From Anolis carolinensis (taxonomy: Eukaryota), in NCBI RefSeq assembly GCF_035594765.1, contig NW_026943820.1:26234647-26298646 (forward strand): 64,000 nt of DNA. The letters run 5' to 3'. Every line of letters begins with the position of its first letter. Positions within the stretch are counted from its first letter, which is position 1. Both the position numbers and the translations under genes were made by a program. Positions 1-62,935 of the stretch are shown piece after piece. The notes under the pieces are model-generated. The model made no database searches. It saw nothing but the letters and a program-made list of their open reading frames with translations, and was not told the origin of the DNA.

Positions 1-1806
1 AAACATCATGTTTTACAATAAATTAACAAAAAAAAAAGCAGTTCAATACATGGTAACGTTATGTAGTAATTACTGTATTTATGAATTTAGCACCAAAACA
101 TCGCAATGTATTGAACATATCGACTACAAAAACATTGACTACTCAAAGGCAGACTGTGTTGGATAATCCAGAACATTGGATAAGCGAAGGTTGGATAAGC
201 GAGATTCTACTGCATTTTCAAAGTAAGGACTGCACAATGAAATAGGAAATAACACTTTCAAACCAGGAACAGAAAATGTTTCAAATTTTGTGTAGCCAAA
301 GCCTTTCCGACTGATGGCCATCAAGCCTCTGTTGAAAAGCTTCGGAAAAAGAGACTCCAACACACTCACAGGCAGGTATTCCATGATTCAATAATTCTTA
401 TTATCAAGTCTTTCCTACTGTTCCCACGGAATATATTTTCCTATTGTTTGAATCCTGGAAAAGCAGGAAACAAGCCTGCTCCGTCTTCAGTATCAAGTTC
501 CTTTTTCTCAGCCTTCTCTTCTCCAAGCTAAAAATCCTTGAAATCCTTTGGAGAGATTCATAGTTTGCAGACTTTTCACCATTTGGGTCACATTTCTTGT
601 GCATCTCTTTCTTGAATTGTGGTGCCCAGATCTGGACACCAGGTTATTCCAGGTTAGGAGGTCTGATTAAAGCGGTATAGAGTTGCATTGTGTAAGTCTT
701 GGTGTTGATCCATACTTCCAAGAAAATAAAACCAGCCACAAACTAGACATACAGACTTATGTCTATGAAATCATTTGCTGCCAACTTCTTTCTCAGTTGC
801 AATTCTACAGTGTTATAAATCCATTTGCACACAAGTAAACTGAAGTTTGGTTTCAAGACCTTACAGCCAGCACAGTCAGTGGGCATGACAATATATACAG
901 TAGAGTCTCACTTATCCAAGCTAAACGGGCCAGCAGAACCTTGGATAAGTGAATATCTTGGATAATAAGGAGGGATTAAGGAAAAGCCTATTAAACATCA
1001 AATTAGGTTATGATTTTACAAGTTAAGCGCCAAAACATCAAGTTATACAACAAATTTGACAGAAAAAGTAGTTCAATACGCAGTAATGTTATGTTGTACA
1101 GTAGTCTCACTTATCCAAGCTAAACGGGCCAGCAGAACCTTGGATAAGTGAATATCTTGGATAATAAGGAGGAATTAAGGAAAAGCCTATTAAACATCAA
1201 ATTAGGTTATGATTTTACAAGTTAAGTGCCAAAACATCAAGTTATACAACAAATTTGACAGAAAAAGTAGTTCAATATGCAGTAATGTTATGTTGTACAG
1301 TAGTCTCACTTATCCAAGCTAAATGGGCCAGCAGAACCTTGGATAAGTGAATATCTTGGATAATAAGGAGGGATTAAGGAAAAGCCTATTAAACATCAAA
1401 TTAGGTTATGATTTTACAAATTAAGCACCAAAACATCATGTTTTACAACAAATTTGACAGAAAAAGCAGTTCAATACACAGCAATGTTATGTTGTAATTA
1501 CTGTATTTACGAATTTAGCAACAAAATATCACGGTATATTGAAAACATTGACTACAAAAATGGCTTGGATAATCCAGAAACTTGGATAAGCGAGGCTTGG
1601 ATAAGTGAGACTGTACTGTCATCCAGAGTTACAGGGTTGTTGTGTATTTTCTGAGCTGTATGGCCATGTTCCAGAAGTATTCTCTCCTGACGTTTCACCC
1701 ACATCTATGGCAGGAATCCTCAGAGGTTGTGAGGCCCCAAGTTTGCCCATACCTCACAACCTCTGAGGATGCCTGCCATAGATGTGGGCACAATGTCAGG
1801 GCATAA

Positions 1807-9538: not shown

Positions 9539-9729
9539 AAATTTTATATATATTATTTTAATGTTTTTTGTGACTCATGAGTCACAAAAAAAGTATTAAA
9601 ATAAGAGCAAAGGGAAACAATTAACTGGTCTATCGCAAGCCTCCAAAATATGCAAGATAATTTTTAAAGTAATTAAATTAATGGGGAGATTATAATAATA
9701 CAGTAAGTCTATTTTTAAAGAGAATACTG

Positions 9730-13150: not shown

Positions 13151-13169
13151 TGTTGTTATTATTTTATTA

Positions 13170-41597: not shown

Positions 41598-41819
41598 GGT
41601 AGTCATGCCTACGCATGCGCGTGTGTGCCCAATGGGACTCATCATCACCCTGAATAGATTGACAGCTTTGCTAATCTATTCCAAAGTGATGATCTTATAC
41701 CGGCGCTACTCTTCCAAGGGTTAGAGGCGATTTATTTCCTCTTCTACAAGGAGATAACTTTACAGCTTGCTTTTCATTTCCCCCAAAGGACAGTATGGGG
41801 CCCTTTGTGGGCCATTGTG

Positions 41820-42240
41820 GTGGGCCGACAACGCAGCCGCTCTCATGTGCAGCCAAGCCCATTCCTTGTCTTTCCTATTGTTTTTTTCCTGCAGGGCAGC
41901 TGGCCAACATCTGCACCACAGCTGCCCCTCCTCCTTTGGACTGAAACATCTGCTTGGATCACGTGACAGGCGCTTGGAGGCAGTCTGTTGCACGGTCTTT
42001 TTCCCAACACATGCAAACTTTGGAGAGATGACACTGGGAAGGAGGAGGGATGTGCCGTGTCTGCATGCAACGAAGGAAAGAGATCCGGCGTGGCTTCGCT
42101 GAGCTAGGATTTCCTGGGCTATACGTTCAGAGGCCGGGGCCTGCCAGAACTAACGCGGGCCAGATGTGCCGACTTGGCAGCCGTGCGCCCAAACTTTATC
42201 GAAAGGATGCGCCGCTGACGTGATTGCGTTGGATGTAAGT
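41820..42240 (+). promoter_or_regulatory. CpG-rich putative promoter and non-coding exon, probably of B3GNT9
   Basis: CpG cluster with E-box TCACGTGAC (~41959), CRE-like TGACGTGA (~42216) and a plus-strand donor GAT|GTAAGT at ~42234. The next strong acceptor of a recognised gene is at 62868. Confidence 0.45.
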
Positions 42241-42300
42241 ATACGGACACTTTAATTCTGGGTTGGGAGGAGAATGTGCTCTTCGGATCCCTCATCTTCA

Positions 42301-43490
42301 AGGTTGCTGTATGTTTTCTGGGCTATATAGCTATGTTCCAGAAGTATTCTCTCCTGACGTTTCGCCCACATCTATGGCAGGCATCCTCAGAGGTTGTGAG
42401 GTACATTAGAAACAAGGCAAGTGAGTTGTAAAAGGCTTTCATGGCCGGAATCACTGGGTTGTTATGCACTTTCTGGGCTGTATGGCCATGTTCCAGAAGC
42501 ATTCTCTCCTGACGTTTCGCCCACATCTATGGCAGGCATCCTCAGAGGTTGTGAGGTACATTGGAAACAAGGCAAGTGAGCTGTAGAAGGCTTTCATGGC
42601 CAGAATCACTGGATTGTTATGCACTTTCTGGACTGTATGGCCATGTTCCAGAAGCATTCTCTCCTGATGTTTCGCCCACATCTATGGCAGGCATCCTCAG
42701 AGGTTGTGAGGTACATTGGAAACAAGGCAAGTGAGTTGTAAAAGGCTTTCATGGCCGGAATCACTGGGTTGTTATGCACTTTCTGGGCTGTATGGCCATG
42801 TTCCAGAAGCATTCTCTCCTGACGTTTCGCCCACATCTATGGCAGGCATCCTCAGAGGTTGTGAGGTACATTAGAAACAAGGCAAGTGAGTTGTAAAAGG
42901 CTTTCATGGCCGGAATCACTGGGTTGTTATGCACTTTCTGGGCTGTATGGCCATGTTCCAGAAGCATTCTCTCCTGACGTTTCGCCCACATCTATGGCAG
43001 GCATCCTCAGAGGTTGTGAGGTACATTAGAAACAAGGCAAGTGAGTTGTAAAAGGCTTTCATGGCCGGAATCACTGGGTTGTTATGCACTTTCTGGGCTG
43101 TATGGCCATGTTCCAGAAGCATTCTCTCCTGACGTTTCGCCCACATCTATGGCAGGCATCCTCAGAGGTTGTGAGGTACATTGGAAACAAGGCAAGTGAG
43201 CTGTAGAAGGCTTTCATGGCCAGAATCACTGGATTGTTATGCACTTTCTGGACTGTATGGCCATGTTCCAGAAGCATTCTCTCCTGACGTTTCGCCCACA
43301 TCTATGGCAGGCATCCTCAGAGGTTGTGAGGTACATTGGAAACAAGGCAAGTGAGCTGTAGAAGGCTTTCATGGCCGGAATCACTGGATTGTTATGCACT
43401 TTCCGGGCTGCATGTCCATGTTCCAGAAGCATTCTCTCCTGACGTTTCGCCCACATCTGTAGCAGGCATCCCCAGAGGTTGTGAGGTCTG
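42301..43490 (-). repeat. Tandem array of 8 x 155-bp Penelope pLTR-derived units, each with a minimal type I hammerhead motif on the minus strand
   Basis: Exact 155-bp period (42356, 42511, 42666, 42821, 42976, 43131, 43286, 43441); minus strand CCT-CTGAGGA-T-GCCTGC..GTGGGC-GAAA-CGTC-AGG. Confidence 0.85.
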
Positions 43491-45721
43491 TTGGAAACTT
43501 GGTTTATATATCTGTGGAAGTTCTTGGGTTATCTTCTGCTCTCTTTTCCCTTCTTTCATCTTCCTTGGCTGCCCAGTTGTCAATGCACACAATGTGTTGT
43601 TGAAGGCTTTCATGGCCGGAATAACTGGGTTGCTGTGCGTTTTCCGGGCTGTACGGCCATGTTCCAGAAGCATTCTCTCCTGACATTTCACCCACATCTA
43701 TGACAGGCATCCTCAGAGGTTGTGACGTCTGTTGAAGTTTCCCCACCACATAGATACATACATATTTTCGCTTTTATTATGTGTACTAGCTGTGCTCGGC
43801 CACGCGTTGTTGTGGCTTATGGGAATCATTTGTTGACCAGGTAGAATAGCAGTGAATAGCCTTGCAGCCTCAAAGCCTGGCCGTTTTCTTCTTATGCGAA
43901 TCCTAGTTTGGTGAGCTGGAATACAAAGGAATAGGCTTTCTGCTTGGAAGGCTGGGTACTTGTGTTCTAGGGGAATGGTTTTTTGGCCAATTTGAATTGC
44001 ACTGAATAGCCTCGCTGCTTCAAAGCCTGGTTGCTTTCTATATATGGGCATCCTTCCTTGGACAGGTTGAATGGGACGGAGTAGCTTCGTGGCTTCAAAG
44101 CCTGGGGATTTTCAACTGAGGGGAAATCTTGGTTGGTCATGTTGAACAGCACTGAATAGCCTTGTTGTTTGCAAGCCTGGCTGCTTTCTACCTTGCAGAA
44201 TCCTTGCTTGGCCAGTTTGAATGGCAATTAATAGTAAATTGGACTATTTTTTCTATTTTTTTTAATTGAAAGACATAGACTGGATGACTATGTCTTTTGC
44301 GGCCAAATTTGGTGTGATTGGGTTCAGTGGTTTTGTTGTTTACTCCATAATAAAACGTCACATTACATTTTTATACATATAGATACATGGTGTAGCATGT
44401 TCAAGCATGATCTGCTGAACTTGTGGACTGAAAAGTTGCAGATTTGAATCCAGGGAGTGGAGTGAGCACCCGCTGTTAGCCCCAGCTTCTGCCAACCTAG
44501 CAGGTTGAAAACATGCAAATGTGGGTAGATCAATAGGTACTGCTCCGGCGGGAAGGTAACAGCGCTCCATGCAGTCATGCCAATGGCCACATGACCTTGG
44601 AGGTGTCTACGGACAACGCTGGTTCTTCGGCTTAGAAATGGAGATGAGCACCAACCCCCAGAGTCGGACACGACTAGACTTAACGTCAGGGGAAACCGGT
44701 TGAGTTCTCTTCTCCCAGTTGTGCTGTGGGTCAGTCTTCCACCAGAAAAAGCACCAAGACACAAGCTGGTAGATTCCAACAGATTTTATTGTACAGAATA
44801 CCAGAACCTTCTCTTTGGCCCATTTATATAGGGGCTCTCACACACCAGAGGGTAATTGAGGTTTTATGGCTGGCCCGTTTTATGGCTGGCATCTGTTCTT
44901 TGTCAGCCGACCGGAGATGTCAAAGACTGGAGATCATGACAAAACCTTTACCTCTATCTATAGATATATATACACTCCACTTGCTTCACTGCCTACAGAA
45001 ACTCTGAAGATGCCGTTAGCCACAGATGCAGGCGAAACGTCGGGAGAGAATGCTGCTGGAACATGACCATACAGCTTGAAAAACTCACAGCAACTCAGGA
45101 CATTAGTGACTGGTTGTTTCGGGCATGTTGATGGGTTTTGTATCCTAGTGCAGTCAGTCCCTGCCAGCCTGGTCTTGGGAGAACCAAGCCCCTCGGTCCC
45201 CCATGAGAAAAGTGGAAAAAGAAATAAGCCATTCATGCTCCGGCACAAGCCAGGCGTCTGTCCAAAATGGCTTATTTTTACTCTTGGCCCGGCTTTCGGG
45301 GAAAGTTTCCCACTGCCTTCCTTCCCTCGGTATGACCAAGAAGGATTTTCCTGTAAGAACCCTGCCACGGAGACAGCGCTTGCGATGGCACGGCCCCGGC
45401 AGGAAGATTTTGCAGAGCCTGGCATCTGCCCAAGCAGCACATCGGAAGAGTTTTGTGCTTTTGACTAAAGGAGGAGACCCCGACGTGAGACCTCCAGGCC
45501 GGAATCATCCCAAGTGAATCCAGGTCTGTAGAGAAGGTTGCAGGGAATCCATTGTGCAAATAACCCTAGACTCTTTCTTCTTCCTCTTCTCTGTAGCTTT
45601 TCTTTCAACTGTTCCTCTTTTCTGCAACCATTCTCTCCTCTACAATGGACTACAATGTCCATTTATCCCGCTCGACAACTGTTCAGGATCTAACAAGAAT
45701 CGTAATCTAATCTATCTACAG

Positions 45722-47669: not shown

Positions 47670-50343
47670 ATCTACAGCAAAACTGGATTTCTTCACTTGC
47701 CTCCTTTGAGTGCTTTCCTTTTTAGCATGCCTTTGCTGCAGTTGCTTTGCATCTTTCTGTTTTTCTTGGCCAAGAGGAACAGATTCCAAGGCTGACCATT
47801 GCACGGCTGGATACGTGAAAGAAATCCGATTGGCTGGATTCAAGTCCCGATTCAAAGCAAGGAGTTAGGTCTGAATCTCGCCTCCAGCTGCCTTTAAACT
47901 CTTCATGGTTGGAATCACTAGCTGTGACTTTTTTGGGCTGCATGGCCATGTTCCAGCAGCATTCCCTCCTGATGTTTCGCCTGCATCTGTAGCTAATGGC
48001 ATCTTCAAAGCTTCTGTTGGCAATGAATCAAGTGGAATGTATATGTATTTAATGTCCAGGGTGGGAGAAAGAACTCTTGTCTGTTTAAAACAAGTGTGAA
48101 TGTTGCCATTAGCAAGCTTGAATAGCATTGAGTAGCCATGAAGTTTGCAAAGTCAATCAGTGAGGGGCAATGTTTGAGAATTATATAAAGATGGATGAAA
48201 AATAAATTAATAGCACTATGAACGATGGACTTTAAACAATAGAGGAAAATAAGCTTTGTAAAAAAAGTTTAGGATACATAAAGATTTGATAATCAAGGGG
48301 TAAAGGAAGATGAACAGAAGTCAACTATATATTATATTTTTATATTATTATTATTATTTGTTCTTCTCCTTTTTTTCTTTTTTCTTTTTTTTGAGGGTAG
48401 GTAGGTAGGAAGTGGTGACTGGACACTAAACTCATTTCCTCACTTTCTTTAAGAAATCTGTTCTCACTCTTTTGCTGTACATTTTTGAAAAATCATAATA
48501 AAAATTATTTTTAAAAAATCAGTGAGGGTATCTGCATAGAGGTAGCCTGCCCTCTGTTGCCTGGAGGCATCCTCTGTTTGGGAGGTGTTAACTGGCACTT
48601 GATTATTCGCTGTCAGGACATTCCACAGATATATACAACGCACTCCACTTACTTCGCTGCCAACAGAACTTCTGAAGAAGCCAATAGCAACAGTTGTAGG
48701 AAAAAACGTCAGGAGAAAGTGCTACTGGAACATGACCATACAGTCTGGAAAACACACAACAACCTTGAAACTCACAGCAATGTGTTGTCGAAGGCTTTCA
48801 TGGCTGGAATCACAGAATTGTTGTGCATTTTCCGGGCTCTATGGCCATGTTCCAGAAGCATTCTCTCCTGACATTTCACCCACAACTGTGGCAGGCATCC
48901 TCAGAGGTATGAGGGTGAAATGTCAGGAGATAATGCTTCTGGAACATGGCCATACAGCCCGAAAAACACAATCCAGAAACTCAAAGCAACCCATCCAAAC
49001 TTGTCTGTTGTGTGTGCCAAGTAGCCACATCTGTAATTCTGTATTTGTTTTTGTCGTGTGCCTTCAAGTTGTGCCTGATTTATGGCAAATCTATTTTCTT
49101 AAAAAGAAAATGGGTTCCCTGGAACTACAAAGACAAGTACCCACTATTACAGTAATACAGAAATCATTAAACCTAAATTTAGTTCAATACAACAATATGA
49201 AAACAGATACAAAAGGCATTGTTAAACAATCAAACAAAGGACTGTGACATTCACAGTAAAAACAGTATTTTTCTCTTGAAGGATGAATTTACTCCTCTTC
49301 TCATAAACAATAAATGTTCTTTAGTTCTTTAATTGTTCCAAATATACAAACTGAGTCCTCTTCTTATATATAATTACTAGCTGTGCCCGGCCACGCGTTG
49401 CTGAGGCAAAGTGGTGGTGGTATTGGTTAAAAGTTGTTGTGGAATTTTTATTTGACATGATTTGTATTTTTTTAATTAATTTTATTGTAACTTATTTTTT
49501 TATTTATTATATTTTATTATTTTGTTGTATTATTTTTAGTTATTTTGTTATAGTATTTCATTGTATTAATTTTTTTAGTGTTTTTAATTATTTTTAGTGT
49601 TTTTTTATTGTTTTTGATTGGGTTGCTAGGAGACCAAGTTGGAGGAGCTTAGCCTTCTAACTGGCAGCAATTGGATAAAAGCAATTATTCCTCTCCTTCT
49701 AATTAGGACTTTATTTTTCTTTTCTTTTTGTTGTATCAACCTAGAGGCGTGGATGATGGGTTGTGTTGTCAAATTTTGAGGTTGGGGGGCCTGTAGTTTT
49801 GTTGTTTTGTGGGTCGCCGTGATGCCATCACTCTTTTATATATATAGATTGTTCTTGTTTCTTTATTATGGATAGTAGACTCCAAAACCACAACCGATTT
49901 CAATTCAAAAGAGTCTTCATCAGGTGGATTGTAGTTCTTTTTTCAGTTGTTTTAAGGTTTTTTTTAATGTGGATCAGAAAGATCTAGGTTTTAACACGCA
50001 TACTCTGCAAACAGTTTGATTCCAATTCAATACAATTTTTTTCTTGGTAGGATTTCTTCTGAGAAGGTGTGCCATTGATTTCCTCCGTGGATGAAAAACT
50101 AGCCTTGTCCAAGATCCCCCAATGCGTTTCCATGGCCGAGCAGTTTTCAAACCTTGGTGTCCTAAATGAACGTTCAAATTATTACATTTCACTGGCTCTA
50201 TGCCTATATACAGGGTGAGGATAACATTGTAATGAGGGATCATAGTGGTTTGAGGGTTGGATTATGACTTTGGAGACCAGGTTCAATTTGCCACTCAGCC
50301 GTGATAATCCACAGAGTGGCCCTGGTCAAATCACACACTCTCA

Positions 50344-51898
50344 TAGAATCATAGAATAGTAGAGTTGGAAGGGACCTCATGGGCCATCCAGTCCAACCCC
50401 CTGCTAAGAAGCAGGAAATCGCATTCAAAGCACCCCCGACAGATGGCCATCCAGCCTCTGCTTAAAAGCCTCCAAAGAAGGAGCCTCCACCATGGCCCCG
50501 GGGAGAGAGTTCCACTGTCGAACAGCCCTTCTCACAGGGAGGAAGTTCTTCCTGATGTTCAGGTGGAATCTCCTTTCCTGTAGTTTGAAGCCATTGTTCC
50601 CTTGTGTCCTAGTCTGCAGGGCAGCAGAAAACAAGCTTGCTCCCTCCTCCCTATGACTTCCCTTCACGTATTTGTACATGGCTATCATGTCTCCTCTCAG
50701 CCTTCTCTTCTGCAGGCTAAACATGCCCAGATCTTTAAGCCACTCCTCATAGGGCTTGTTCTCCAGACCCTTAATCATTTTAGTCGCCCTCCTCTGGACG
50801 CTTTCCAGCTTGTCAACATCTCCCTTCAACTGTGGTGCCCAAAATTGGACACAGTGTGATTCCAGGTGTGGTCTGACCAAGGCAGAATAGAAAGAGGGGG
50901 AGCATAACTTCCTTGGATCTAGACGCTATTCCCCTATTGATACAGGCCAGAATCCCGTTGGCTTTTTTAGCAGCCGCATCACATTGTTGGCTCATGTTTA
51001 GCTTGTTGTCCACGAGGACTCCAAGGTCTTTTTCGCACACACTGCTGTCAAGCCAGGCGTCCCCCATTCTGTATCTTTGATTTCCATTTTTTCTGCCAAA
51101 GTGAAGTATCTTGCATTTGTCCCTGTTAAACTTCATTTTGTTAATTTTGGCCCATCTCTCTAGTCTGTCAAGATCGTTTTGAATTCTGCTCCTGTCTTCT
51201 GGAGTGTTAGCTATCCCTCCCAGTTTTGTGTCGTCTGCAAACTTGATGATCGTGCCTTCTGACCCTTCGTCTAAGTCGTTAATAAAGATGTTGAACAGAA
51301 CCGGGCCCAGGACGGAGCCCTGCTTGTGGCACTCCACTTGTCACTTCTTTCCATGATGAAGATGACGCATTGGTGAGCACCCTTTGGGTTCGTTCGCTTA
51401 GCCAATTACAGATCCACCTAACCGTAGTTTTGTCTAGCCCACATTTTACTAGTTTGTTTGCCAGAAGGTCGTGGGGGACTTTGTCGAAGGCCTTACTGAA
51501 ATCCAGGTACGCTACATCCACAGCATTCCCTGTATCGACCCAACTCGTAACTCTATCGAAAAAAGAGATCAGATTAGTCTGGCATGACTTGTTTTTGGTA
51601 AATCCGTGTTGACTATTAGCAATGACCGCATTTGTTTCTAAGTGTTCGCAGACCACTTCCTTAATGATCTTTTCCAGAATTTTGCCTGGTATTGATGTGA
51701 GGCTGACCGGACGGTAATTGTTTGGGTCGTTCTTTTTTCCCTTCTTGAAGATCGGGACCACATTCGCCCTCCTCCAATCTGCTGGGACTTCTCCCATTCT
51801 CCAAGAACTCTCGAAGATAATTGCCAGTGGTTCTGAAATAACTTCCGCTAGTTCCTTCAGTACTCTTGGGTGTAGCTGATCTGGCCCTGGGGACTTGA
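50344..51898 (-). mobile_element. 5'-truncated CR1 LINE (RT region, frameshifted)
   Basis: ORF pieces with NYRPVSLTS, YLDFSKAFDKV, QGSVLGP, KFADDTKL; (ATTCTATG)n tail at 50341; ACTCTCA TSD; interrupts a tRNA-like SINE. Confidence 0.93.
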
Positions 51899-52361
51899 AC
51901 TCTCAGCCTTATAAAAATCCATGGGGTTTGGTATGTTTTGGAATAGGAGGATATCCAGGGGGTTTCCATAACCACAACACTAGTGGGATTTGGTACAGCG
52001 TAGGTCTTCACGTGGATCTACTGTACGATATTGAGCCACAGAGAATCATGGTCCTAGAGTTGAGAGATTTTGCTGCGAACTCAAAGATGCTGTGAACAGA
52101 GCTGGCAAGTTGTTTTACAAGCGCTGGAGAAAGTGGTGGGAATAAGGAAATGCTGTTGTGTTTTAACAGCAAAAGGCCAAAGGAGTGTGAGCCAAGCTCC
52201 ACTGCAGAGTCCAAGTTCACTCTCAGCACAGAAGAGCCATAAAACTGGCTCTTTCCTCGAATTTGCTGACTGGCCAAGAGGTCGCATTTCATCGATTGTC
52301 CAGTTCGTTGCCTGTAAGCAAACACGGAGCAGGAACTTGTCCTAGCAAGTGTTCCAAATAA

Positions 52362-53910
52362 GTGTTGTTGAAGGCGTTCATTGCCGGAATGACAGCGTTG
52401 TTGTGTGTTTTCCGGGCTGTATGGCCATGTTCCAGAAGCATTCTCTCCTGATGTTTCGCCCACATCTATGGCAGGCATCCTCAAAGGTTGTGAGGTATAT
52501 GGAGAAACTAAGCAAGGAAAGTTTATATATTTGTGGAATGTCCAGAGTTGGAGAAAGAACTCTTGTATGTTTGAGGCCAGTTTGAATGTTGTAATTAATC
52601 GCCTTGATTAGCATTAATGGCCTTGCCAGCTTCATGTCCTGGCTTTTTCCTGCCTGGGGGAATCTTTTGTGTGGAGGTGTTACCTGCCCCTGATTGATTC
52701 ATATCTGGAATTCTCTTTTCAGAGTGTTGTTCCTTATTGACTGTCCTGATTTCAAAGTTTTTTAATACTGGTAGCTAGGTTTTGTTCATTTTCATGGTTT
52801 CCTCCTTTCTGTTGACATTATCCACATGCTTGGATAACTGAATCAATTAGGGGCAGCTAACACCTCCAAACAAAAGATTCCACAGGCAGGAAGAAGCTAG
52901 GACATGAAGCTTGCAAGGCCATTAATGCTAATCAAAGTGGTATATACTCGAGTATAAGCCGACCCAAATATAAGCCGAGGCACCTAATTTCACCACAAAA
53001 AACTGGAAAAACACTGACTCATGTATAAGCCGAGGGAGGTAAATTTCAGAAATAAAAATAGATACCAATAAAATTACATTAATTGAGGCATCAGTAGGTT
53101 AAATGTTTTTGAGTATTTACATAAAGCTCAGATTTAACATAAGACTGTCCAACTCTGATTAAATCATTATTCTCATCTTCTTCAATGTAAATGTGCTTAT
53201 GTATCCTTTTAATAATAACAGAATAAAATAATACATGTAATAATAATAATAAATACAGGAAAATAATACATGTAATAATAAATACAGTAAAACAATAAAT
53301 GTAATAATAATAATAAGACCAGAGTGAAATAATAAATGTATTATTAATAATAAAAAATGGAGTAAAATAAATGTAATAGTAGCAACAATAATAGAGAAAA
53401 ATAATAAATGTAATAATACCAATAATAGAGAAATATAATAAATGTACCATATATTCTTGAGGATAAGCTGACCCAAATATAAGCCAACCAGGACCCTCAC
53501 CGGAGTATAAGCTGAGGGGGAATTTTTCAGTCTTAAAAAAAGGGCTGAAAAACTAGGCTTATACTTGAGTATATACAGTAATCACCTTGATTAGCATTAA
53601 TGGCCTTGCCAGCTTCATGTCCTGGCTTTTTCCTGCCTGGGGGAGTCTTTTGTTTGGAGGTGTTAGCTGCCCCTGATTGATTCATATCTGGAATTCCTCT
53701 GTTTTCAGAGTGTTGTTCCTTATTTATTGTTCTGATTTTAGAGTTTTTGTTAAATACTGGTAGACAGATTGTGTTCATTTTCATGGTTTCCTCCTTTTTG
53801 TTGAAATTGTCCACATGCTTGTGGATTTCAACGTCGTCTCTGTGTAAATAAATACGTCAGGAGAGAATGCTTCTGGAACATGGCCATACAACCCGGAAAA
53901 CACACAACAA
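52362..53910 (-). mobile_element. Penelope-like element remnants (pLTR plus end of ORF), interrupted by a pogo/Tc2-like MITE (~52940-53578)
   Basis: EIHKHVDNFNKKEE-like C-terminus and the hammerhead-bearing pLTR. The same family recurs at ~1620-2365, 3885-4065, 18068-19450, 27763-27925, 31933-32720, 33405-33530, 38350-38860, 44950-45100 and 47905-48975, often as inverted pairs. Confidence 0.7.
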
Positions 53911-55529
53911 TCCTTTTCAAATAAGGCTTGGAGAGTAGGTGACTCATTTGCAGAATTTTCTTGAGATGGAAAGACAAATGATAAGAGATCCATCCGCACG
54001 AGGCCTGAAGCTGGATTTGCAATTAAAGCAGCACAAATATAAAAATGTTGAGCACATTGCTCCCATCATTATAGAAAATCACACATATATGGAGTGACTA
54101 CTGTACATATGCACATATAAATCACTCAGGCCTCCCCAAAGTGGAACCTTCCAGGATGCCTTGAGGATAATAGGAACTGTAGTAATTCTGGAAGGCATCA
54201 AGTTGCCAAAGGCAGATGTTAAAAAATACAATTTCTTTTCCAATGAGATTTTTTCAGATCTTTTTCGTCTCTTGTGCAATATTCAAGGGCCTTCCCTCCC
54301 ACAAAGAGATTCCGGGCTCTGGCCCAAACATTGGAGGCTCCAGGATTTTGCTGGCTTTTGCAGAGCTGTTGGCAGGCGAAATCTCTCAATCATGGAAAAT
54401 GCGGGTTCCCATCCCAACACAGAGTTGAGCCAAGGCCCAAGCCTACAAAGCTAAACTGGGCCAGAATTTGCTGCCAGGGTTGTCATTACAGTATTCTTAC
54501 CCTCTTATATCGGTGTGATGAACCATGGGCCTTGTAGTCCTGCTCAGGACATTGTAATCCCTGATGAAGATGAAAACTTGGGTTTTTTACCTTCCCAGTC
54601 TGAACTGGATTCCTCTCAGCCAGATCCTTCCCAGGCAGATCTGGAAACCTTGCACCTGCAAGAAAGTTGTGCCCCAGAAGTATGTCAAACAACCCCAGAG
54701 CCTACTTCTCCCGTGTTCTTGCGCCGGGAGTTTTGTAAACAACAGAGAAGTTTGGATTCAGCTTCGCGCAGGAGTGCGAGGATAGCAGCTAAGAATGTTG
54801 CCAATTAACATTGGTTCTCGTGAGAATCTTTAAGGAGTTTAACATCTGGTCTCAGAGTTTAGCTTTCGTTTCTGATTCCCAGAGAACCGCTTTGGTGAGA
54901 AAGTTGGACTCTATATAGGTGTTTTGCCCGCGTAGCAACTTCGCGGAGTCAATTCGTCAGCCTACGGAGCGAGTTGTGTCTGGACAGCGCGCTCCGATTC
55001 AAGCCTCGCTTCAGCTCAAGCCTTGCCTTGCTATCCAGCCTTCGCCTTGCTTCCCAGCCTTTGTTTACCTACGGACTTTGCCTTGTTTCCCAGGACTAAT
55101 CCTTGCCTTGTTTCACGGATTTTACCAAGTTATTCCACGGACCTTGTTCTTGTTCTTAGTTACCTTGTTCCACGTTCAAGCCTTGTTTCAAGTATCAAGT
55201 TATTTCCTAGCCACGCTCAAGTTTTATGGACTAAGGACCTTGTCATCTCCCCTCACTTTGCTTGGCAAAGTGAGTGTTTCGGTTATTGGATTACAACTTT
55301 GGACCTTAATATTTCTTATTGGACATTGCTTTTTTGGACTAATTCTGACCTTTCCTGAAGGGTCTAATTCTGGACTATTTTCTATACTTGTTTTTATTAA
55401 CTTTATATATTCCTTCAATAAAGATATTAGTTAGATTCTGGCCTCTGTGTATGGTTATTGGTGCCTCTGCCGCCTGGGTCGTGACAGTTTGACTCCGCCA
55501 CCCATAAGCACCAACTAACCGAGGCCAGG

Positions 55530-56516
55530 ATGTCTACCGGAGCCGCGCCGGCTGGACAGCCGCTCAGCTACACCATCAGCAAGGACGAAGTGGACCGCAT
55601 CCGTGACAGACTCAACGCGCAGGATGGAGAAATAAAAGGGTTGAGGGAGCGCGGAGTTCGCCTCCCGGCCATGGCGTTGCCTACCAAGTTTTCTGGAGAA
55701 GCTGCTAAGGTTCATGTTTTCCGCCGCCAATGTCAAGCTTATCTAGAGGCCCGTGATGCCGAGTTTCCCCAAGAAGACATCAAGGTGGCGTGGGTCTACA
55801 GTCTTCTAGACGGACCAGCGGCTAGCTGGGCGACGGCCCTGTTTGATCAAGCCTCCCCCCACCTAAGTTCAGCACAACGCTTCTTGGATCACCTTAAGGA
55901 GACCTGGGGAATCGAGGACAATTTGGAGGCAGCCGGTCACAAACTCCGGCGCCTCCTTCAAGGAGACAGACCCATGTCTCAGTACATAGCCGAGTTCCGC
56001 GTGCTGGCCCACAACACCGGCTGGAACGATGTAGCCCTCAGAGGACAATTTCGGGAGGGTCTCAACATTGAAATGCTGGAAGAAATCTCCAAGGTGGATC
56101 CTCCCCAGACCCTCGAGGCACTCATTGATCAATGTTTACGGGCTGAAGTCATGATTGCCAACAGGAAACAATGGGTTCGAGGCCAGGGCGGTAGAGCCGG
56201 GGCAAAACCCCCCGCTCCCGCCAGTGTTCAGCCACGTCCGGTGTGGAGACCCCCGCCGCCAACCCCATACCCCAGAGGAGGCGAGGAGGTGCCGATGCAG
56301 TTGGGCAATGTGCGTCCCAGACTAGATGCCGCCGAGAAGGCCCGTCGTCAACGCTTGAACCTCTGCTGGTACTGCGGGAATGGGGGCCACTTCGCCAGAG
56401 AGTGCCCAGCCAAAGGGAAGCCTGCCGCCCGTCTTGCGGCGGCGTCCTCCACGGAGTCGAAGGCGTCTGAGCCGACTGGCACACAGCCGGCGGGGGAAGC
56501 CAACGACCGGGTGTAG
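55530..56516 (+). CDS. gag: Gag (retrotransposon capsid plus CCHC zinc knuckle)
   Basis: PTKFSG, QGDRPMSQYIAEF (MHR-like), EVPMQLG, CWYCGNGGHFARECP. Confidence 0.95.
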   Translation: MSTGAAPAGQPLSYTISKDEVDRIRDRLNAQDGEIKGLRERGVRLPAMALPTKFSGEAAKVHVFRRQCQAYLEARDAEFPQEDIKVAWVYSLLDGPAASWATALFDQASPHLSSAQRFLDHLKETWGIEDNLEAAGHKLRRLLQGDRPMSQYIAEFRVLAHNTGWNDVALRGQFREGLNIEMLEEISKVDPPQTLEALIDQCLRAEVMIANRKQWVRGQGGRAGAKPPAPASVQPRPVWRPPPPTPYPRGGEEVPMQLGNVRPRLDAAEKARRQRLNLCWYCGNGGHFARECPAKGKPAARLAAASSTESKASEPTGTQPAGEANDRV

Positions 56517-59500
56517 AGAGGCTCGCCAACCCGGTCAAAAAATCCATCCAAGAGCCGCCAACCGGGGTCCTGTTCCTTCTCGTGGTCACATTATGGTCAG
56601 CAAAAAGGGGACCCGTCATGATCCACGCCATGATAGACTCTGGAGCTACCAACAATTTCATCGATAGAGAGTATGCCGACTCTCTGGGATTACAATATCA
56701 TGATTTCAAGAATGCCCGTGTGGTGCAAGCCATAGACGGCCGTCCCCTCAAGACGGGCCCCGTAAGCCAGTGGTCGGAACCCACCAGGATGTGGATAAGG
56801 GAACATATGGAAGAGATTTCCTTCTTTGTTACCGAGGTTCCCCATTTCCCTGTGATTTTGGGAATTCCATGGCTGACACTCCACGACCCTAACATCTCCT
56901 GGTCCAACAGAGAACTGCAGTTTGCTTCACCGTACTGCCAAAACCATTGCCTCGTAGCCAAGGTATGCCATGCCACAGACTCCGAGCCCATCATCACCTT
57001 GCCAAAGAAGTACTCCGAGTATTGGGATGTATTCAATGAGAAAGAAGCCGAAAAATTACCCCCACATAGACCTTATGACTGTGCCATTGACTTGGTGGAG
57101 GGGGCCCCGATCCCGCGAGGGCATCTCTACTCCCTGACTGAACCAGAGCAAGAAGCTCTCAGGGAATTCTTAGAGACAAACCTTCGCAAGGGGTTCATCA
57201 GACCCTCTCAATCCCCAGCCGCCTCCCCAGTGATGTTTGTGAAGAAGAAGTCAGGGGAATTACGCTTGGTGGTGGACTACAGAGCATTGAACAATATCAC
57301 CAAGCGGAACAGCTATCCCCTGCCCTTAATCTCGGATCTACTGGACCGACTTCGAGGAGCCAAGGTCTACACCAAGCTGGATCTTCGGGGGGCTTATAAT
57401 CTAGTTCGCATCAGAGAAGGGGACGAGTGGAAGACCGCCTTCCAGACTAAATTCGGATTATTCGAGTCCCGAGTTATGAATTTCGGTTTATGCGGAGCTC
57501 CCGCAACGTTCCAGCATTTTGTCAACGATATTTTTCAGGACTATCTAGACAGATTCTTGATAATCTACCTGGACGATTTTTTGGTGTTTTCCAGATCACA
57601 ATCAGAACATGAGAACCACGTCAAAATGGTGTTGCAACGACTGCGGGATCATGGACTTTATGCCAAGCTAGAAAAATGCGCTTTTGATCTACAAGAGGTA
57701 GATTTCCTTGGCTACCGCATCTCGCCTCTAGGGCTTTCCATGGATCCAGCCAAAGTTTCAGCAGTATTGGAATGGCGGGCGCCAACTAACAAGAAAGAGG
57801 TGCAGCGTTTCTTGGGGTTCGCGAACTACTACCGCAAGTTCATTCCAGATTTTGCCCGCTGGTCCGACCCCATCACTAGCTGCATCCGTGGAAAGCAGCC
57901 TTTCCGCTGGACTGATCAAGCAGAGAAAGGGTTCCAGCAACTGAAGAAACTATTCACCTCCCAGCCAATTCTACAGCACCCAAATCCTGGAACCCCTTTT
58001 GTGGTGCAAGCGGACGCCTCTGATGTGGCAATTGGGGCTGTACTCTTACAACCGGTGGGAGATCACCTCCACCCCTGTGCCTTTTATTCTCGTCAACTAA
58101 CCACACCAGAGAGGAATTACACCATTTGGGAAAAAGAACTACTGGCCATAAAGGCAGCCTTTGAAACTTGGAGACATTGGCTAGAAGGGGCCAAATTCCC
58201 CATTGAAGTCCACACTGATCATCGTAATCTAGAACATCTAAGAACTGCCCGCAAACTAAATCAGAGGCAGCAACGTTGGGCTTTATTCTTTGAACGTTTC
58301 AACTTCCAGATCCATTATGTGACCCCAGCTCAAACCAAGCAAGCAGACGCCCTGTCACGTAAACCGGAATACGCTGCAGGACGCAAGGAGACCTTTGAAT
58401 CCCAACTGCTACAACCTGAGAACTTTGCCACGCTCACAGTGGGGAACACCAAATCCAGTCCCATTGGTTCAACTTCCCCTACTCCAGGACCCATCTGTGC
58501 TCAAGAAATCAGGGCTAGTCAGCAAGCAGATGCCTGGGCGCAGGACCAACTTCGCCAAGGTCTGCATTTTCCCTTTTCGCTTAAAGATGGGCTGCTCTGC
58601 TATAGAAATCATGTTTATATCCCACCCGGACCGGGCAGGGAAAAAGCGCTTCGTCTGTGTCATGACTGCAAACCAGCAGGACACTTCGGACTATTTAAAA
58701 CCATGCATTTGATCCTAAGAGATTTTTGGTGGCCCAAGATCCGCAAGGATGTGGAAAAATATGTCAACACCTGCCCAGTATGCCAGCGCTCCAAGATACG
58801 AAGGGAGAAGTCCTCAGGGCTTTTGCACCCCCTTCCTACCCCATCTCGCCCATGGGAAATAATTTCCGCGGATTTCATCACTGACCTACCACCTTCCTGT
58901 GGATTCACCACGATCTTAGTGGTGGTGGACCTATTCACCAAGTTAGCCCATTTCATTCCCTGCGAAGGCCTCCCCACGGCCAAAGAAACTGCGGATCTAT
59001 TTCTTCAGCATGTTTTCAGACTACATGGATTGCCCAAGAGTTTAGTCACAGACCGTGGATCTCAATTCACCTCTCGTTTTTGGAAGGCACTACAAAAACT
59101 ACTGGGCATAGACTCTCGCTTATCTTCAGCTCATCATCCCCAAACAGATGGGCAAACGGAGCGCACCAATGCCACTTTGGAGCAGTATCTTCGCTGTTAT
59201 GTAAACTACCAACAGGACAATTGGGCTTCTCTGTTACCACTGTCTGAGTTTGCCTACAATAATGGAGTTCAAGCTTCTACAAAAGAAACGCCGTTCTTTG
59301 CAAACTACGGTTTCCATCCACGTTTCTTTCCCCCTGTCATTGAAACTTCAGAAGTTCCCGCAGCAGAGGATTGGCTGCAGGAACTCGCAGCGGTGCAACA
59401 ACTTTTGCTCCAGCAACTGGACCAAGCCAAGGAGGACTATAAACGCCACGCTGACAAACACCGCCAGCCGGGCCCCGAAATCAAGGTAGGAGATCGGGTT

Positions 59501-60256
59501 TTTCTGTCCACTCGCTTTCTGCCCTCCCACCGCCCATGCCGGAAGTTAGATGCCCGCTTCATTGGCCCCTATCCAGTGGTGGCGCAATTAAACCCCGTGA
59601 CTTTCAAACTCCAACTTCCGCGTTCAATGCGCATTCACCCAGTGTTTCACCGTTCCCTGCTCCTTCCGGCGGATGGTGTGCGTCCTGATACAGACCAACC
59701 AGCCCCCCCTCCTGTTTTGATGAATGGGGAGGAGGAGTTCGAGGTTGAGGACATTTTGGATTCTCGCTTTCATCGCCGCCGCCTACAATATCTCATTGAC
59801 TGGGTGGGTTTTGGGCCTGAGGAACGCTCTTGGGAAGACGCCTCCACAGTCCATGCTCCTGATCTAACCCGTCGCTTCCATCTGACCTATCCCACCAAAC
59901 CGCGACCTCGCGCTTCGGGGAGAGGACCCCAGTTTGGGAGGGGCCCTGAGGAGGGGGATAGTGTGATGAACCATGGGCCTTGTAGTCCTGCTCAGGACAT
60001 TGTAATCCCTGATGAAGATGAAAACTTGGGTTTTTTACCTTCCCAGTCTGAACTGGATTCCTCTCAGCCAGATCCTTCCCAGGCAGATCTGGAAACCTTG
60101 CACCTGCAAGAAAGTTGTGCCCCAGAAGTATGTCAAACAACCCCAGAGCCTACTTCTCCCGTGTTCTTGCGCCGGGAGTTTTGTAAACAACAGAGAAGTT
60201 TGGATTCAGCTTCGCGCAGGAGTGCGAGGATAGCAGCTAAGAATGTTGCCAATTAA
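56492..60256 (+). CDS. pol: Pol (PR-RT-RNaseH-IN-chromodomain), in the -1 frame relative to gag, extending into the 3' LTR
   Basis: DSGA, YLDD, DASD, HHCC/DDE, GPY and chromodomain FEVEDILDSR..YLIDWVGFGPEERSWE. The frame is open from 56471; start set at the putative slip site. Confidence 0.95.
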   Translation, partial: GGSQRPGVERLANPVKKSIQEPPTGVLFLLVVTLWSAKRGPVMIHAMIDSGATNNFIDREYADSLGLQYHDFKNARVVQAIDGRPLKTGPVSQWSEPTRMWIREHMEEISFFVTEVPHFPVILGIPWLTLHDPNISWSNRELQFASPYCQNHCLVAKVCHATDSEPIITLPKKYSEYWDVFNEKEAEKLPPHRPYDCAIDLVEGAPIPRGHLYSLTEPEQEALREFLETNLRKGFIRPSQSPAASPVMFVKKKSGELRLVVDYRALNNITKRNSYPLPLISDLLDRLRGAKVYTKLDLRGAYNLVRIREGDEWKTAFQTKFGLFESRVMNFGLCGAPATFQHFVNDIFQDYLDRFLIIYLDDFLVFSRSQSEHENHVKMVLQRLRDHGLYAKLEKCAFDLQEVDFLGYRISPLGLSMDPAKVSAVLEWRAPTNKKEVQRFLGFANYYRKFIPDFARWSDPITSCIRGKQPFRWTDQAEKGFQQLKKLFTSQPILQHPNPGTPFVVQADASDVAIGAVLLQPVGDHLHPCAFYSRQLTTPERNYTIWEKELLAIKAAFETWRHWLEGAKFPIEVHTDHRNLEHLRTARKLNQRQQRWALFFERFNFQIHYVTPAQTKQADALSRKPEYAAGRKETFESQLLQPENFATLTVGNTKSSPIGSTSPTPGPICAQEIRASQQADAWAQDQLRQGLHFPFSLKDGLLCYRNHVYIPPGPGREKALRLCHDCKPAGHFGLFKTMHLILRDFWWPKIRKDVEKYVNTCPVCQRSKIRREKSSGLLHPLPTPSRPWEIISADFITDLPPSCGFTTILVVVDLFTKLAHFIPCEGLPTAKETADLFLQHVFRLHGLPKSLVTDRGSQFTSRFWKALQKLLGIDSRLSSAHHPQTDGQTERTNATLEQYLRCYVNYQQDNWASLLPLSEFAYNNGVQASTKETPFFANYGFHPRFFPPVIETSEVPAAEDWLQELAAVQQLLLQQLDQAKEDYKRHADKHRQPGPEIKVGDRVFLSTRFLPSHRPCRKLDARFIGPYPVVAQLNPVTFKLQLPRSMRIHPVFHRSLLLPADGVRPDTDQPAPPPVLMNGEEEFEVEDILDSRFHRRRLQYLIDWVGFGPEERSWEDASTVHAPDLTRRFHLTYPTKPRPRASGRGPQFGRGPEEGDSVMNHGPCSPAQDIVIPDEDENLGFLPSQSELDSSQPDPSQADLETLHLQESCAPEVCQTTPEPTSPVFLRREFCKQQRSLDSASRRSARIAAKNVAN

Positions 60257-61892: not shown

Positions 61893-62153
61893 GCAGTATC
61901 CTTCTGGATCGCCTGGCTGGGATGGGACTTGGAGACACTGTTCTGCAGTGGCTCCACTCCTTCCTGAAAGAACGTACCCAAATGATGGTGTTGGGGGACA
62001 CCGGCTCGACCTCACGACTGTTGTCTTGTGGGGTCTCACAGGGTTCAGTTCTGTCCCCCATGTTGTTTGACATCTACATGAAGCCACTGAGAGAGATCAT
62101 CAGGGGTTTTGGAGTTCGGTGTCATCTGTACACAAATGACACCCAACTCTACT
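61893..62153 (+). mobile_element. L2/CR1-clade LINE RT fragment (5' part at ~61050-61215, split by an LTR-like insertion)
   Basis: VLQWLHSFL..GVSQGSVLSPMLFDIYM..HLYTNDTQLY. Confidence 0.7.
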
Positions 62154-62935
62154 ACAGTAGAGTCTCATTTATCCAACATAAATGGGCCGGCAGAACGTTG
62201 GATAAGTGAATATGTTGGATAATAAGGAGGGATTAAGGAAACGCCTATTAAACATCAAATTAGGTTATGATTTTACAAATTAAGCACCAAAACATCATGT
62301 TATACAACAAATTTGACAGAAAAAGTAGCTCAATACGCAGTAATGCTATGTAGTAATTACAGTAGAGTCTCACTTATCCAATGTAAACGGGCCGGCAGAA
62401 TGTTGGATAAGCAAATATGTTGGATAATAAGGAGAGATTAAGGAAAAGCCTATTAAACATCAAATTAGGTTATGATTTTACAAATTAAGCACCAAAACAT
62501 TATGTTATACAACAAATTTGACATAAAAAGTAGTTCAATACACAGTAATGCTATGTAGTAATTACTGTATTTACGAATTTAGCACCAAAATATCACGATG
62601 TATTGAAAACATTGACTACAAAAATGCGTTGGATAATCCAGAATGTTGGATAAGCGAGTGTTGGATAAATGAGACTCTACTGTACTATATTTACGAATTT
62701 AGCACCAAAATATCATGATGTATTGAAAACATTGACTACAAAAATGCATTGGATAATTCAGAACATTGAATAAGTGAGACTCTACTGTATTTTTATATTA
62801 TTATTATGCCCCGATTTACTGCAAGTGATGGAATAAACTGCTCTGACCTCTCTCTTCTTTATTTGCAGATGGAAAAGGCCAGCAGACCATTCTCCTAATA
62901 CTACAACGAACGTCTCTTGGAAATTTGTGAAGACA

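What the first reader, a model, noticed from the sequence alone, without database searches (positions are those of the whole stretch)
42301..43490. Retrozyme-like tandem array: 8 x 155-bp units each carrying a minimal hammerhead ribozyme
Seen: on the minus strand each unit reads CCU-CUGAGGA-U-GCCUGC(CAUAGAU)GUGGGC-GAAA-C-GUC^AGG. This gives the hammerhead core CUGAnGA/GAAA, a 6-bp stem II with GU pairs, stem I CCU/AGG (extendable CUC/GAG across an internal loop) and a loopless palindromic ACGU stem III. Six of eight copies have an intact core; copy 3 has GAAACAUC and copy 8 has CUGGGGA. Known: Penelope-like elements carry such minimal type I hammerheads, which work as dimers through the palindromic stem III, and tandem HHR monomers (non-LTR retrozymes, newt satellite 2) are processed to monomeric and circular RNAs. 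Inference: this head-to-tail array supplies the dimer partners in cis, so a minus-strand transcript would be cut into 155-nt monomers (sites at 42356/5, 42511/0, ...) that could circularise - a candidate squamate retrozyme. Two unit subtypes are interleaved (A,B,A',A,A,B,B').
Basis: partly seen in the sequence, partly recalled or inferred. Interest (0 to 1): 0.85.

Follow-up and report, generated by a model that had tools for sequence, protein, structure and literature searches.

The report
Tandem Penelope hammerhead junction repeats
Eight head-to-tail 155-bp copies of the junction piece of a Penelope-like retrotransposon sit here, each carrying that element's already published minimal hammerhead ribozyme. 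The array is real, but it looks like an ordinary local by-product of a hugely abundant lizard transposon, and nothing yet shows that it makes circular RNAs.

Summary
TRF finds a 155-bp array of 7.6 copies at 42315-43498. Eight minus-strand hammerhead (HHR) cores lie exactly 155 nt apart; six are intact, one has ACAU and one has CUGGGGA.

The motif is not special to this locus. The window holds 19 matches against 0.04 expected by chance, 11 of them outside the array.

The published Poseidon_Ac (PAc, Anolis carolinensis) consensus shows what each unit is: the last ~36-41 nt of a Penelope-like element (PLE) pseudo-LTR plus the first ~115-119 nt of its ORF. The HHR stretch is letter-identical to PAc over 76 nt. 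Unit junctions fall at about +115-119 and the array's 3' end at about +83. These match the two published internal reverse-transcription start sites, which bound the 'tail' at nt 85-119.

The PAc HHR was shown to cleave only with PAc protein, and no RNA-seq ends were found at its cut site.

A 2026 preprint already reports PLE-derived non-LTR retrozymes in four of the five reptile genomes it sampled, with a mean unit of 176 bp.

Evidence bearing on the retrozyme reading:
- The monomer is not unusually structured (z = +0.99).
- Contigs carrying the junction have only locus-level depth.
- The unit lacks ORF +120-172, which PAc needs in a template in vitro.
- No RNA data were available.

Verdict: a new member of a known kind, of low to moderate interest.

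The parts
42315..43498 (-). Tandem array with period 155 and 7.6 copies. Each unit is roughly the PLE pLTR's last 36-41 nt plus the first 115-119 nt of the PLE ORF.
   Evidence: TRF; self-BLAST of the unit; unit phasing; comparison by eye with the published Poseidon_Ac consensus.
42349..42400 (-). HHR copy 1, intact core. Stem I 5' strand is at 42391-42400, the core plus stem II at 42356-42390, and stem I 3' strand at 42349-42355. The predicted cut lies between 42356 and 42355.
42511..42545 (-). HHR core copy 2, intact. Predicted cut between 42511 and 42510.
   Evidence: 0 mismatches
42666..42700 (-). HHR core copy 3. It has GAAACAUC: the palindromic ACGU of stem III is broken by a CpG-type transition.
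42821..42855 (-). HHR core copy 4, intact.
42976..43010 (-). HHR core copy 5, intact.
43131..43165 (-). HHR core copy 6, intact.
43286..43320 (-). HHR core copy 7, intact.
43441..43475 (-). HHR core copy 8. It has CUGGGGA (A6 changed to G) and changes in the stem II loop. This copy is preceded by a longer PLE 3' end.
42412..42425 (-). Unit junction, recurring every 155 nt. ORF about +111..119 is joined to pLTR about -41..-36 across an ACAAC(U)CAC microhomology, inside the AC-rich RT start site reported for PAc.
   Evidence: alignment of window copies; published consensus; RT start at 111-118; tail at 85-119
42315..42355 (-). 3'-terminal partial unit from a different PLE subfamily. It ends at about ORF +83, near the first published RT start site, and then meets unique flank.
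   Evidence: flank bridged by contigs
43441..43681 (-). A 241-nt upstream unit: ORF +30..+121 of an older copy, joined directly to about 120 nt of a PLE 3' end (ORF end plus a short pLTR carrying a TATA-like ATATATAA at about 43504-43511) and to HHR core 8.
   Evidence: compared by eye
43682..43745 (-). Ninth, decayed HHR copy with GUGAAAUGUC (two CpG transitions) and about 30 nt of pLTR. This is the 5' edge of the composite.

Best explanation
The array is a non-coding, locally amplified minisatellite. It is built from the pLTR/ORF junction of a Poseidon-type Penelope-like retrotransposon (PLE) in a lizard genome.

**Shown**
- Each 155-bp unit is the last ~36-41 nt of the pseudo-LTR plus the first ~115-119 nt of the PLE ORF.
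- Each unit therefore carries the PLE's own minimal type I hammerhead: core CUGAGGA / GAAA, a bulged U before a 6-bp stem II, a weak stem I, and a loopless palindromic ACGU in place of stem III.
- Unit boundaries and the array's 3' end coincide with the two internal reverse-transcription start sites published for PAc (about +85 and +119).

**Inferred**
- PLE target-primed reverse transcription created the first repeats. Two routes fit: repeated insertion of extremely 5'-truncated copies next to an existing PLE tail, or template switching from about -41 back to the +119 start site.
- DNA-level unequal crossing-over or gene conversion then multiplied two unit types (A and B) to the present eight cores.
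- If the minus strand is transcribed, neighbouring units could pair their ACGU palindromes into the dimeric hammerhead and be cut after GUC. Cleavage of this exact ribozyme sequence is known to be weak and protein-assisted.
- I regard the array mainly as a by-product of PLE activity, not as an element with its own life cycle.
For: - **Array and cores:**
- **Identity to the published element:** the Poseidon_Ac consensus starts with ATG at A9 of the core and ends with ...CUCACAACCUCUGAGG. The unit is letter-identical to it from -19 to +57 and about 85-90% identical from there to +119 (by eye).
- **Geometry:** the cut site lies 26 nt after the ATG, as published.
- **Boundaries:** dispersed copies in the window end at about +77-83 or +116-121. 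The published tail spans nt 85-119 and the RT start is at 111-118. The array junction lies at +111-119 and the array's 3' end at about +83.
- **Family abundance:** 19 motif matches in 64 kb, and more than 30,000 contigs per run match parts of the stretch at 95% or better.
- **Locus-level junction:** contigs spanning the junction with no differences have 1.3-6.3 times the depth of the unique flank, where the assembly holds 3 identical copies (table 8, records 3, 10, 18, 29).
- **DNA-level growth:** two B units share the same six differences and three A units are identical.
- **Non-coding:** the remnant ORF stops after 25 codons, and no ORF above 76 aa lies within the 155-bp units.
- **Published scenario:** the local-amplification route is the one proposed for vertebrate PLE-derived retrozymes.
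Against: - Rfam hammerhead models do not score the motif at all. This is expected for a loopless stem III, but it leaves the call without model-based support.
- The comparison with Poseidon_Ac was made by eye, because the consensus has no reference id usable in the tools.
- Contig depth is only a rough proxy for copy number, so a small multi-locus family with the same junction is not excluded.
- Another first-stage note reports a tandem HHR trimer elsewhere in this genome. Short HHR arrays may therefore recur and could be produced by a dedicated process.
- No RNA data could be examined, so an RNA life cycle is untested, not refuted.
- Six of eight cores are perfect, while every dispersed copy in the window is mutated. 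This could reflect selection and not only youth.
Confidence: 0.75

Rival explanations
1. The array is a true non-LTR retrozyme. It is transcribed on the minus strand and cut by dimeric hammerheads into 155-nt monomers. A host RNA ligase circularises them, and a PLE reverse transcriptase copies them back into the genome as multimers.
For: - The head-to-tail arrangement puts two palindromic ACGU sites 155 nt apart, and six of eight cores are intact.
- GC content is 48%, below 50% as described for animal retrozymes.
- The array meets the operational criterion of the 2026 preprint.
- The unit contains the PLE RT start site.
- Only the 5'-most copy keeps a longer pLTR with a TATA-like box, which could drive read-through of the whole array (inference).
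- A second tandem HHR locus is noted in this genome (unchecked).
Against: - The identical PAc HHR cleaved only with protein, and RNA-seq showed no ends at its cut site.
- The monomer fold is no better than shuffled sequence (z = +0.99), whereas published circles are highly self-paired.
- The unit lacks ORF +120..172. The first 172 nt of the ORF were the minimum for template use in vitro.
- Junction contigs have only locus-level depth, and no other copy of the junction occurs in the window despite about 11 other PLE junction fragments.
- The A/B pattern is not what rolling-circle copying of a single circle would give.
- No RNA run holds the stretch.
Confidence: 0.15
2. The copy number or the order of units is an assembly artefact. 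Under this reading the real locus holds only one or two PLE junction fragments, or a much longer array.
For: - Three units are 100% identical, so short reads cannot place them.
- No contig spans the array.
- The ratio of junction-contig depth to flank depth varies from 1.3 to 6.3 among runs.
Against: - The left flank-to-array junction is recovered in four runs from four studies (table 8).
- Contigs identical to the A-type junction exist in all four runs, at depths of the order expected for a few copies.
- The array has an ordered A/B structure with private variants (A', B'). A collapsed or artificially expanded repeat would not normally show this.
Confidence: 0.08
3. The array is a host-co-opted ribozyme or regulatory RNA locus. 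One example would be a cis-cleaving element in a host transcript, as with the amniote intronic HH9/HH10 ribozymes.
For: The cores are intact. Other first-stage notes place PLE HHRs in host introns in this genome (unchecked).
Against: - No Rfam HH9/HH10 or other family match.
- Units are 96-100% identical and keep their CpGs, so the array is young, not conserved.
- The sequence is that of an active transposon family.
- No host gene was identified around it.
Confidence: 0.02

Closest known systems
Poseidon_Ac / PAc Penelope-like element of Anolis carolinensis and its hammerhead (PMC11167929; Repbase consensus in its File S1)
   Same: - The HHR and flanks are letter-identical from -19 to +57.
- The ATG starts at stem II and the cut site lies 26 nt after it.
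- Copies end at the two RT start sites (about +85 and +119).
- Copies tend to lie in partial tandems.

   Different: - The unit keeps only about 155 of the 2667 bp. It has no RT or GIY-YIG ORF, and no PLE RT or GIY-YIG ORF turned up anywhere in the window.
- From +58 to +119 the unit is about 10-15% diverged, so it belongs to another subfamily or species.
- A normal PLE tandem has a period of about 2.7 kb, not 155 bp.
Vertebrate non-LTR retrozymes as PLE derivatives (Li, Clavereau & Pollet 2026, bioRxiv 10.64898/2026.07.22.740005)
   Same: - A TRF array with at least two consecutive complete minimal HHRs.
- Derived from a PLE terminal region.
- Reptile families average 176 bp, and 75% of all families have at most seven repeats.
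- The proposed birth is local amplification of a 5'-truncated PLE end.

   Different: - That paper relates retrozymes to pLTRs. Here about three quarters of the unit is the ORF's 5' end, and the boundary maps to the internal RT start site.
- The species list of that paper could not be read, so it is unknown whether this genome or this family was included.
Metazoan non-LTR retrozymes with canonical type I HHRs (Cervera & de la Pena 2020, PMC7229834) and newt satellite 2
   Same: - Short tandem repeats (150-450 bp) with GC below 50%.
- One type I HHR per unit.
- A weak stem III that calls for dimeric cleavage.

   Different: - Those HHRs have a stem III loop and loop-loop tertiary contacts, and they give abundant, highly self-paired circRNAs.
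- Here the HHR is the 'rare minimal variant' of PLEs.
- The monomer is not unusually structured.
- No RNA was seen.
Minimal PLE hammerheads (Cervera & De la Pena 2014, PMC4209133; Lunse, Weinberg & Breaker 2017, cited, not readable here)
   Same: - No stem III loop.
[quoted passage not shown] - Expected to act as dimers, with low activity in vitro.
- Thousands of dispersed copies, some head-to-head.

   Different: In the 2014 paper, tandem min-HHRs were mostly about 3 kb apart (full PLEs), or 100-700 bp apart on opposite strands. Here eight lie on one strand at 155-nt spacing.

Membership tests
Hammerhead ribozyme (minimal type I, PLE variant) | Conserved core C3-U4-G5-A6-N7-G8-A9 and G12-A13-A14, an A15.1/U16.1 pair, and H17 not G | tested here: met
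   CUGAGGA ... GAAA-C-G-U-C is present in six of eight array copies with no mismatch. Copy 3 breaks the 15.2/16.2 pair and copy 8 has A6 changed to G.
Hammerhead ribozyme (minimal type I, PLE variant) | Stem II closed by a loop, with the bulged nucleotide after A9 typical of PLE min-HHRs | tested here: met
   A 6-bp stem II (two G-U pairs) with a 7-nt loop, preceded by one unpaired U. The architecture is as described in PMC4209133.
Hammerhead ribozyme (minimal type I, PLE variant) | Loopless palindromic stem III that can form a 4-bp helix between two copies | tested here: met
   ACGU is self-complementary in seven of eight copies and is ACAU in copy 3. Dimer formation itself was not modelled, because in cis it is a pseudoknot.
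Hammerhead ribozyme (minimal type I, PLE variant) | Match to the curated Rfam hammerhead covariance models | tested here: not met
   No Rfam hit at gathering score or at E up to 10 in 41800-44200. Those models expect a closed stem III, so this does not exclude the minimal variant.
Hammerhead ribozyme (minimal type I, PLE variant) | Site-specific self-cleavage | not testable with these tools
   Published for the identical PAc sequence. Cleavage occurred only with PAc protein; C3G and G8C abolished it and the double mutant partly rescued it (PMC11167929).
Penelope-like element (Poseidon clade) fragment | Sequence homology to the pLTR 3' end and the ORF 5' end of a described PLE | tested here: met
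   By-eye alignment with the Poseidon_Ac consensus: 76 nt identical, and the remainder to +119 about 85-90% identical. The remnant peptide MPAIDVGETSGENASGTWP matches the published N-terminus.
Penelope-like element (Poseidon clade) fragment | Copies end at the internal RT start sites ('tail', nt 85-119) | tested here: met
   Window copies end at about +77-83 or +116-121. The array junction lies at +111-119 and the array end at about +83.
Penelope-like element (Poseidon clade) fragment | RT plus GIY-YIG ORF (autonomous element) | tested here: not met
   No such ORF lies in or near the array. The RT fragments at 50813-51797 look LINE-like from their sequence (my reading; Pfam gives only RVT_1), and the 1224-aa pol is Ty3/gypsy. 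The array is a non-autonomous fragment.
Non-LTR retrozyme | Tandem repeat with at least two consecutive units, each with a complete type I HHR; non-coding; GC below 50% | tested here: met
   (GC 0.486). Criterion as given.
Non-LTR retrozyme | Multi-locus family (evidence of mobility): the same unit at independent sites | tested here: inconclusive
   No other copy of the junction occurs in the 64-kb window. Junction contigs have 1.3-6.3 times the flank depth, where 3 identical copies are assembled. The whole genome could not be searched.
Non-LTR retrozyme | Monomer predicted to be a stable, highly self-paired RNA | tested here: not met
   MFE is -32 kcal/mol against a shuffle mean of -35.7, giving z = +0.99. 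The plus strand gives z = +1.64.
Non-LTR retrozyme | Expression as monomeric linear and circular RNAs | not testable with these tools
   No listed holder is on record as RNA. All runs are kept as contigs, and their flank depth looks like DNA.

The most novel reading that the evidence does not exclude
The array is an active squamate retrozyme and the smallest known in animals. A read-through minus-strand transcript, started from the one retained pLTR promoter, would be cut by dimeric minimal hammerheads into 155-nt RNAs. These would circularise and be copied by the PLE reverse transcriptase from its internal start site.

If so, the coincidence of the unit boundary with that start site would show how PLE 'tail' priming gives birth to retrozymes.
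Probability: 0.12. Interest if true: 0.6.

Novelty: new member of a known kind. Interest (0 to 1): 0.3.

Why it matters
The locus is a clean, young example of how a Penelope-like element's junction fragment becomes a hammerhead-bearing tandem repeat. Its unit boundary falls on the internal reverse-transcription start site mapped biochemically for PAc, and its outer 3' end falls on the other start site.

That gives specialists a concrete substrate for two tests:
- Does dimeric arrangement rescue the weak, protein-dependent PAc ribozyme?
- Are PLE-derived 'retrozymes' truly mobile, or merely local minisatellites?

It does not open a new class. The ribozyme, its PLE origin and reptile retrozymes are all already described.

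Tried and rejected
- **Rfam scans** at gathering score and at E up to 10 gave nothing. I take this as the models' blindness to a loopless stem III, not as evidence against the core.
- **First motif search** used a gap one base too long and found nothing. The corrected pattern was run.
- **MFE folding of a 60-nt HHR segment**, as monomer and as homodimer, did not return the hammerhead fold or the ACGU dimer. The HHR-like structure scores -9.7 kcal/mol against an MFE of -14.4. Nearest-neighbour folding cannot score the core or a cis dimer (a pseudoknot), so I dropped this line.
- **Search for an autonomous PLE in the window.** The ORF at 52008-52484 starts with the PLE N-terminus but diverges after about 40 residues, at the tail end. 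The RT fragments downstream look LINE-like from their sequence.
- **Target-site duplication** around the composite: only a 7-nt chance-level match, offset from the ends.
- **Sequencing runs.** All holders are Logan contigs and look like DNA. There are no raw reads and no RNA, so starts, ends and strand could not be examined. The zero-depth bins at 42762-42983 coincide with 100% identical units; I take them as a placement effect, not as absence.
- **Species list of the 2026 preprint** was not recoverable. Lunse et al. 2017 is not held.
- **Sequence look-up in earlier findings** was blank.
- **Limits I kept to.** The published consensus was compared by eye only, because it has no reference id.

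Full report
**1. The observation**

Tandem Repeats Finder reports a single array at 42315-43498 with period 155, 7.6 copies, 96% matches and no indels.

On the minus strand each unit carries CUGAGGA, one unpaired U, a 6-bp stem II with a 7-nt loop, then GAAAC-GUC followed by AGG. A pattern search finds eight such cores in the array, with C17 at 42356 + 155n. Six have no mismatch. The core at 42666-42700 reads GAAACAUC and the core at 43441-43475 reads CUGGGGA.

Three A units are identical, and the two B units share the same six differences.

It is also incomplete. A ninth, decayed core lies 241 nt upstream at 43682-43716, and ten more copies are scattered over both strands of the window. That gives 19 matches where shuffles give 0.04.

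**2. What the unit is**

A full-text search led to PMC11167929, which characterises PAc (Poseidon_Ac), a Penelope-like element (PLE) of Anolis carolinensis, and supplies its Repbase consensus.

The consensus begins with the ORF's ATG inside the hammerhead: the A of the ATG is A9 of the core. It ends with ...CUCACAACCUCUGAGG. In a tandem PLE the ribozyme therefore straddles the pLTR/ORF junction.

Read against that consensus by eye:
- The array unit is letter-identical from -19 to +57.
- It is about 85-90% identical from +58 to about +119.
- It then switches to the last ~36-41 nt of the pLTR.

The published geometry is reproduced exactly: the ORF begins at stem II, the cut site is 26 nt after the start codon, and C3 and G8 lie before the ATG. 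The remnant peptide starts MPAIDVGETSGENASGTWP, like the published protein, and stops after 25 codons.

So each unit is a PLE junction fragment without the 2.5-kb RT/GIY-YIG ORF. One dispersed copy (27762-27898) differs from Poseidon_Ac at only about 3 of 89 positions. From this I infer that the genome is an anole or a close relative; that is inference only.

**3. Boundaries coincide with PLE reverse-transcription start sites**

PMC11167929 shows that PAc starts reverse transcription internally, in an AC-rich stem-loop 111-118 nt into the ORF. It also shows that genomic copies end at two sites bounding a ~34-nt 'tail' at nt 85-119.

In this window:
- Dispersed copies end at about +77-83 or +116-121.
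- The array's internal junction lies within ACAAC(U)CAC at +111-119, a microhomology with the pLTR at about -41.
- The 3'-terminal partial unit (42315-42355) ends at about +83. It belongs to a different subfamily from the internal units.
- The unit upstream of the array (43441-43681) joins +121 of an older copy directly to about 120 nt of another PLE's 3' end.

The whole composite at 42315-43745 is thus a chain of same-strand PLE ends joined tail to head. This is the 'partial tandem' habit of PLEs, taken to an extreme of 5' truncation.

**4. How the array probably arose and grew (inference)**

Two routes would create the -41/+115-119 junction:
- Repeated insertion of severely truncated copies beside an existing tail. 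[quoted passage not shown]
- Template switching by the RT from about -41 back to the +119 start site.

Identical A units and identical B units that differ from each other at six shared positions are not what rolling-circle copying of one circular RNA would produce. They point to DNA-level duplication, by unequal crossing-over or gene conversion, for at least part of the expansion.

**5. Is it a working retrozyme?**

*In favour:*
- The array meets the operational definition in that preprint.
- GC content is 48.6%.
- The head-to-tail layout supplies ACGU partners.
- Six cores are perfect, whereas every non-array copy in the window has at least one core change, mostly CpG-type transitions.
- Only the 5'-most copy keeps a longer pLTR with a TATA-like box.

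*Against:*
- The identical PAc ribozyme showed no cleavage without PAc protein, and RNA-seq showed no read ends at its cut site. That construct held a single HHR, so the dimer case is untested.
- The 155-nt monomer is no more structured than shuffles (z = +0.99 on the minus strand, +1.64 on the plus strand). Published retrozyme circles are highly self-paired.
- PAc needed the first 172 nt of the ORF in its template in vitro. The unit stops at about +119.
- Contigs that span the A-type junction with no differences have 1.3-6.3 times the depth of the unique flank in four runs, where the assembly holds three identical copies. The hammerhead-bearing part sums to 10^5-10^6.
- No other junction copy occurs among the roughly 11 other PLE fragments in the window.

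Depth of Logan contigs is only a rough guide, so I treat mobility as inconclusive. No RNA run holds the stretch and no raw reads were available, so expression is untested.

**6. Reality of the locus**

Contigs from four runs of four studies bridge the unique low-coordinate flank into the first unit (table 8, records 1, 9, 17, 26). The internal count of eight cannot be verified with short contigs. The varying ratio of junction depth to flank depth may reflect length polymorphism.

**7. Comparison with what is known**

- The ribozyme is the minimal PLE hammerhead of Cervera and De la Pena 2014. In sequence it is the PAc hammerhead tested in 2024.
- Tandem HHR repeats as non-LTR retrozymes were defined in 2020.
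- The 2026 preprint reports them in four of the five reptile genomes it sampled, with a mean consensus of 176 bp and mostly seven repeats or fewer, and derives them from PLE pLTRs.
- Rfam's hammerhead models do not detect the motif, as expected for a variant with no closed stem III.
- Earlier first-stage notes on this genome list many Penelope hammerheads and one other tandem trimer. I treat these as unchecked leads that agree with the abundance seen here.

**8. Verdict**

The array is a young, non-coding, PLE-derived tandem repeat that fits the published 'non-LTR retrozyme' category on formal grounds. No evidence shows that it is mobile or makes circular RNA, and several indications suggest it is a local by-product.

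The one modestly new point is that its unit boundary and outer 3' end map onto the two biochemically defined PLE RT start sites.

Novelty: new member of a known kind. Interest: 0.3.

Noticed in passing
window 54919-60882 (+): An apparently intact Ty3/gypsy-type LTR retrotransposon. The gag ORF is at 55530-56516 (Retrotrans_gag, zf-CCHC). An uninterrupted 1224-aa pol ORF is at 56582-60256 (protease, RVT_1, RNase H, integrase, chromodomain). It is flanked by repeated LTR-like ends at 54919-55434 and 60367-60882, which carry the same small tandem repeats.
   Followed up: partly
window 50425-51797 (-): RT ORF fragments that hit Pfam RVT_1 in two pieces and look LINE-type (CR1/L2-like) from their sequence. 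They lie just downstream of a PLE junction copy at 52364-52516 and are not part of a PLE.
   Followed up: partly
window 1690-1789 and 48710-48964: Head-to-head (inverted) pairs of PLE junction fragments, with two opposed hammerhead motifs a few tens of nt apart. These are the fold-back arrangement known for PLE insertions.
   Followed up: partly
window 904-1496, 25772-26691, 62153-62569: Short tandem arrays (periods 199, 132 and 205 bp) of another dispersed repeat that begins TACAGTAGAGTCTCACTTATCCAAC. It is present on both strands and is unrelated to the PLE junction.
   Followed up: no
window 9075-10951: An N gap at 9075-9206, followed by an AT-rich satellite of 86 bp x 14.4 copies at 9723-10951. 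A further complex array with periods 83, 222 and 311 bp lies at 11573-13170.
   Followed up: no
window-wide: All 11 hammerhead copies outside the 155-bp array carry core changes. Most are CpG-type transitions at the two core CpGs (ACGU to ACAU or AUGU; GCGAAA to GUGAAA). The ribozyme's own essential dinucleotides are therefore the first to decay in this genome.
   Followed up: partly
window 3966-4000 (+) and 45004-45041 (+): Two more divergent hammerhead-like junctions with a different stem II and loop, probably from another PLE lineage. The copy at 3966 has CAGAAGA in place of CUGAnGA.
   Followed up: no
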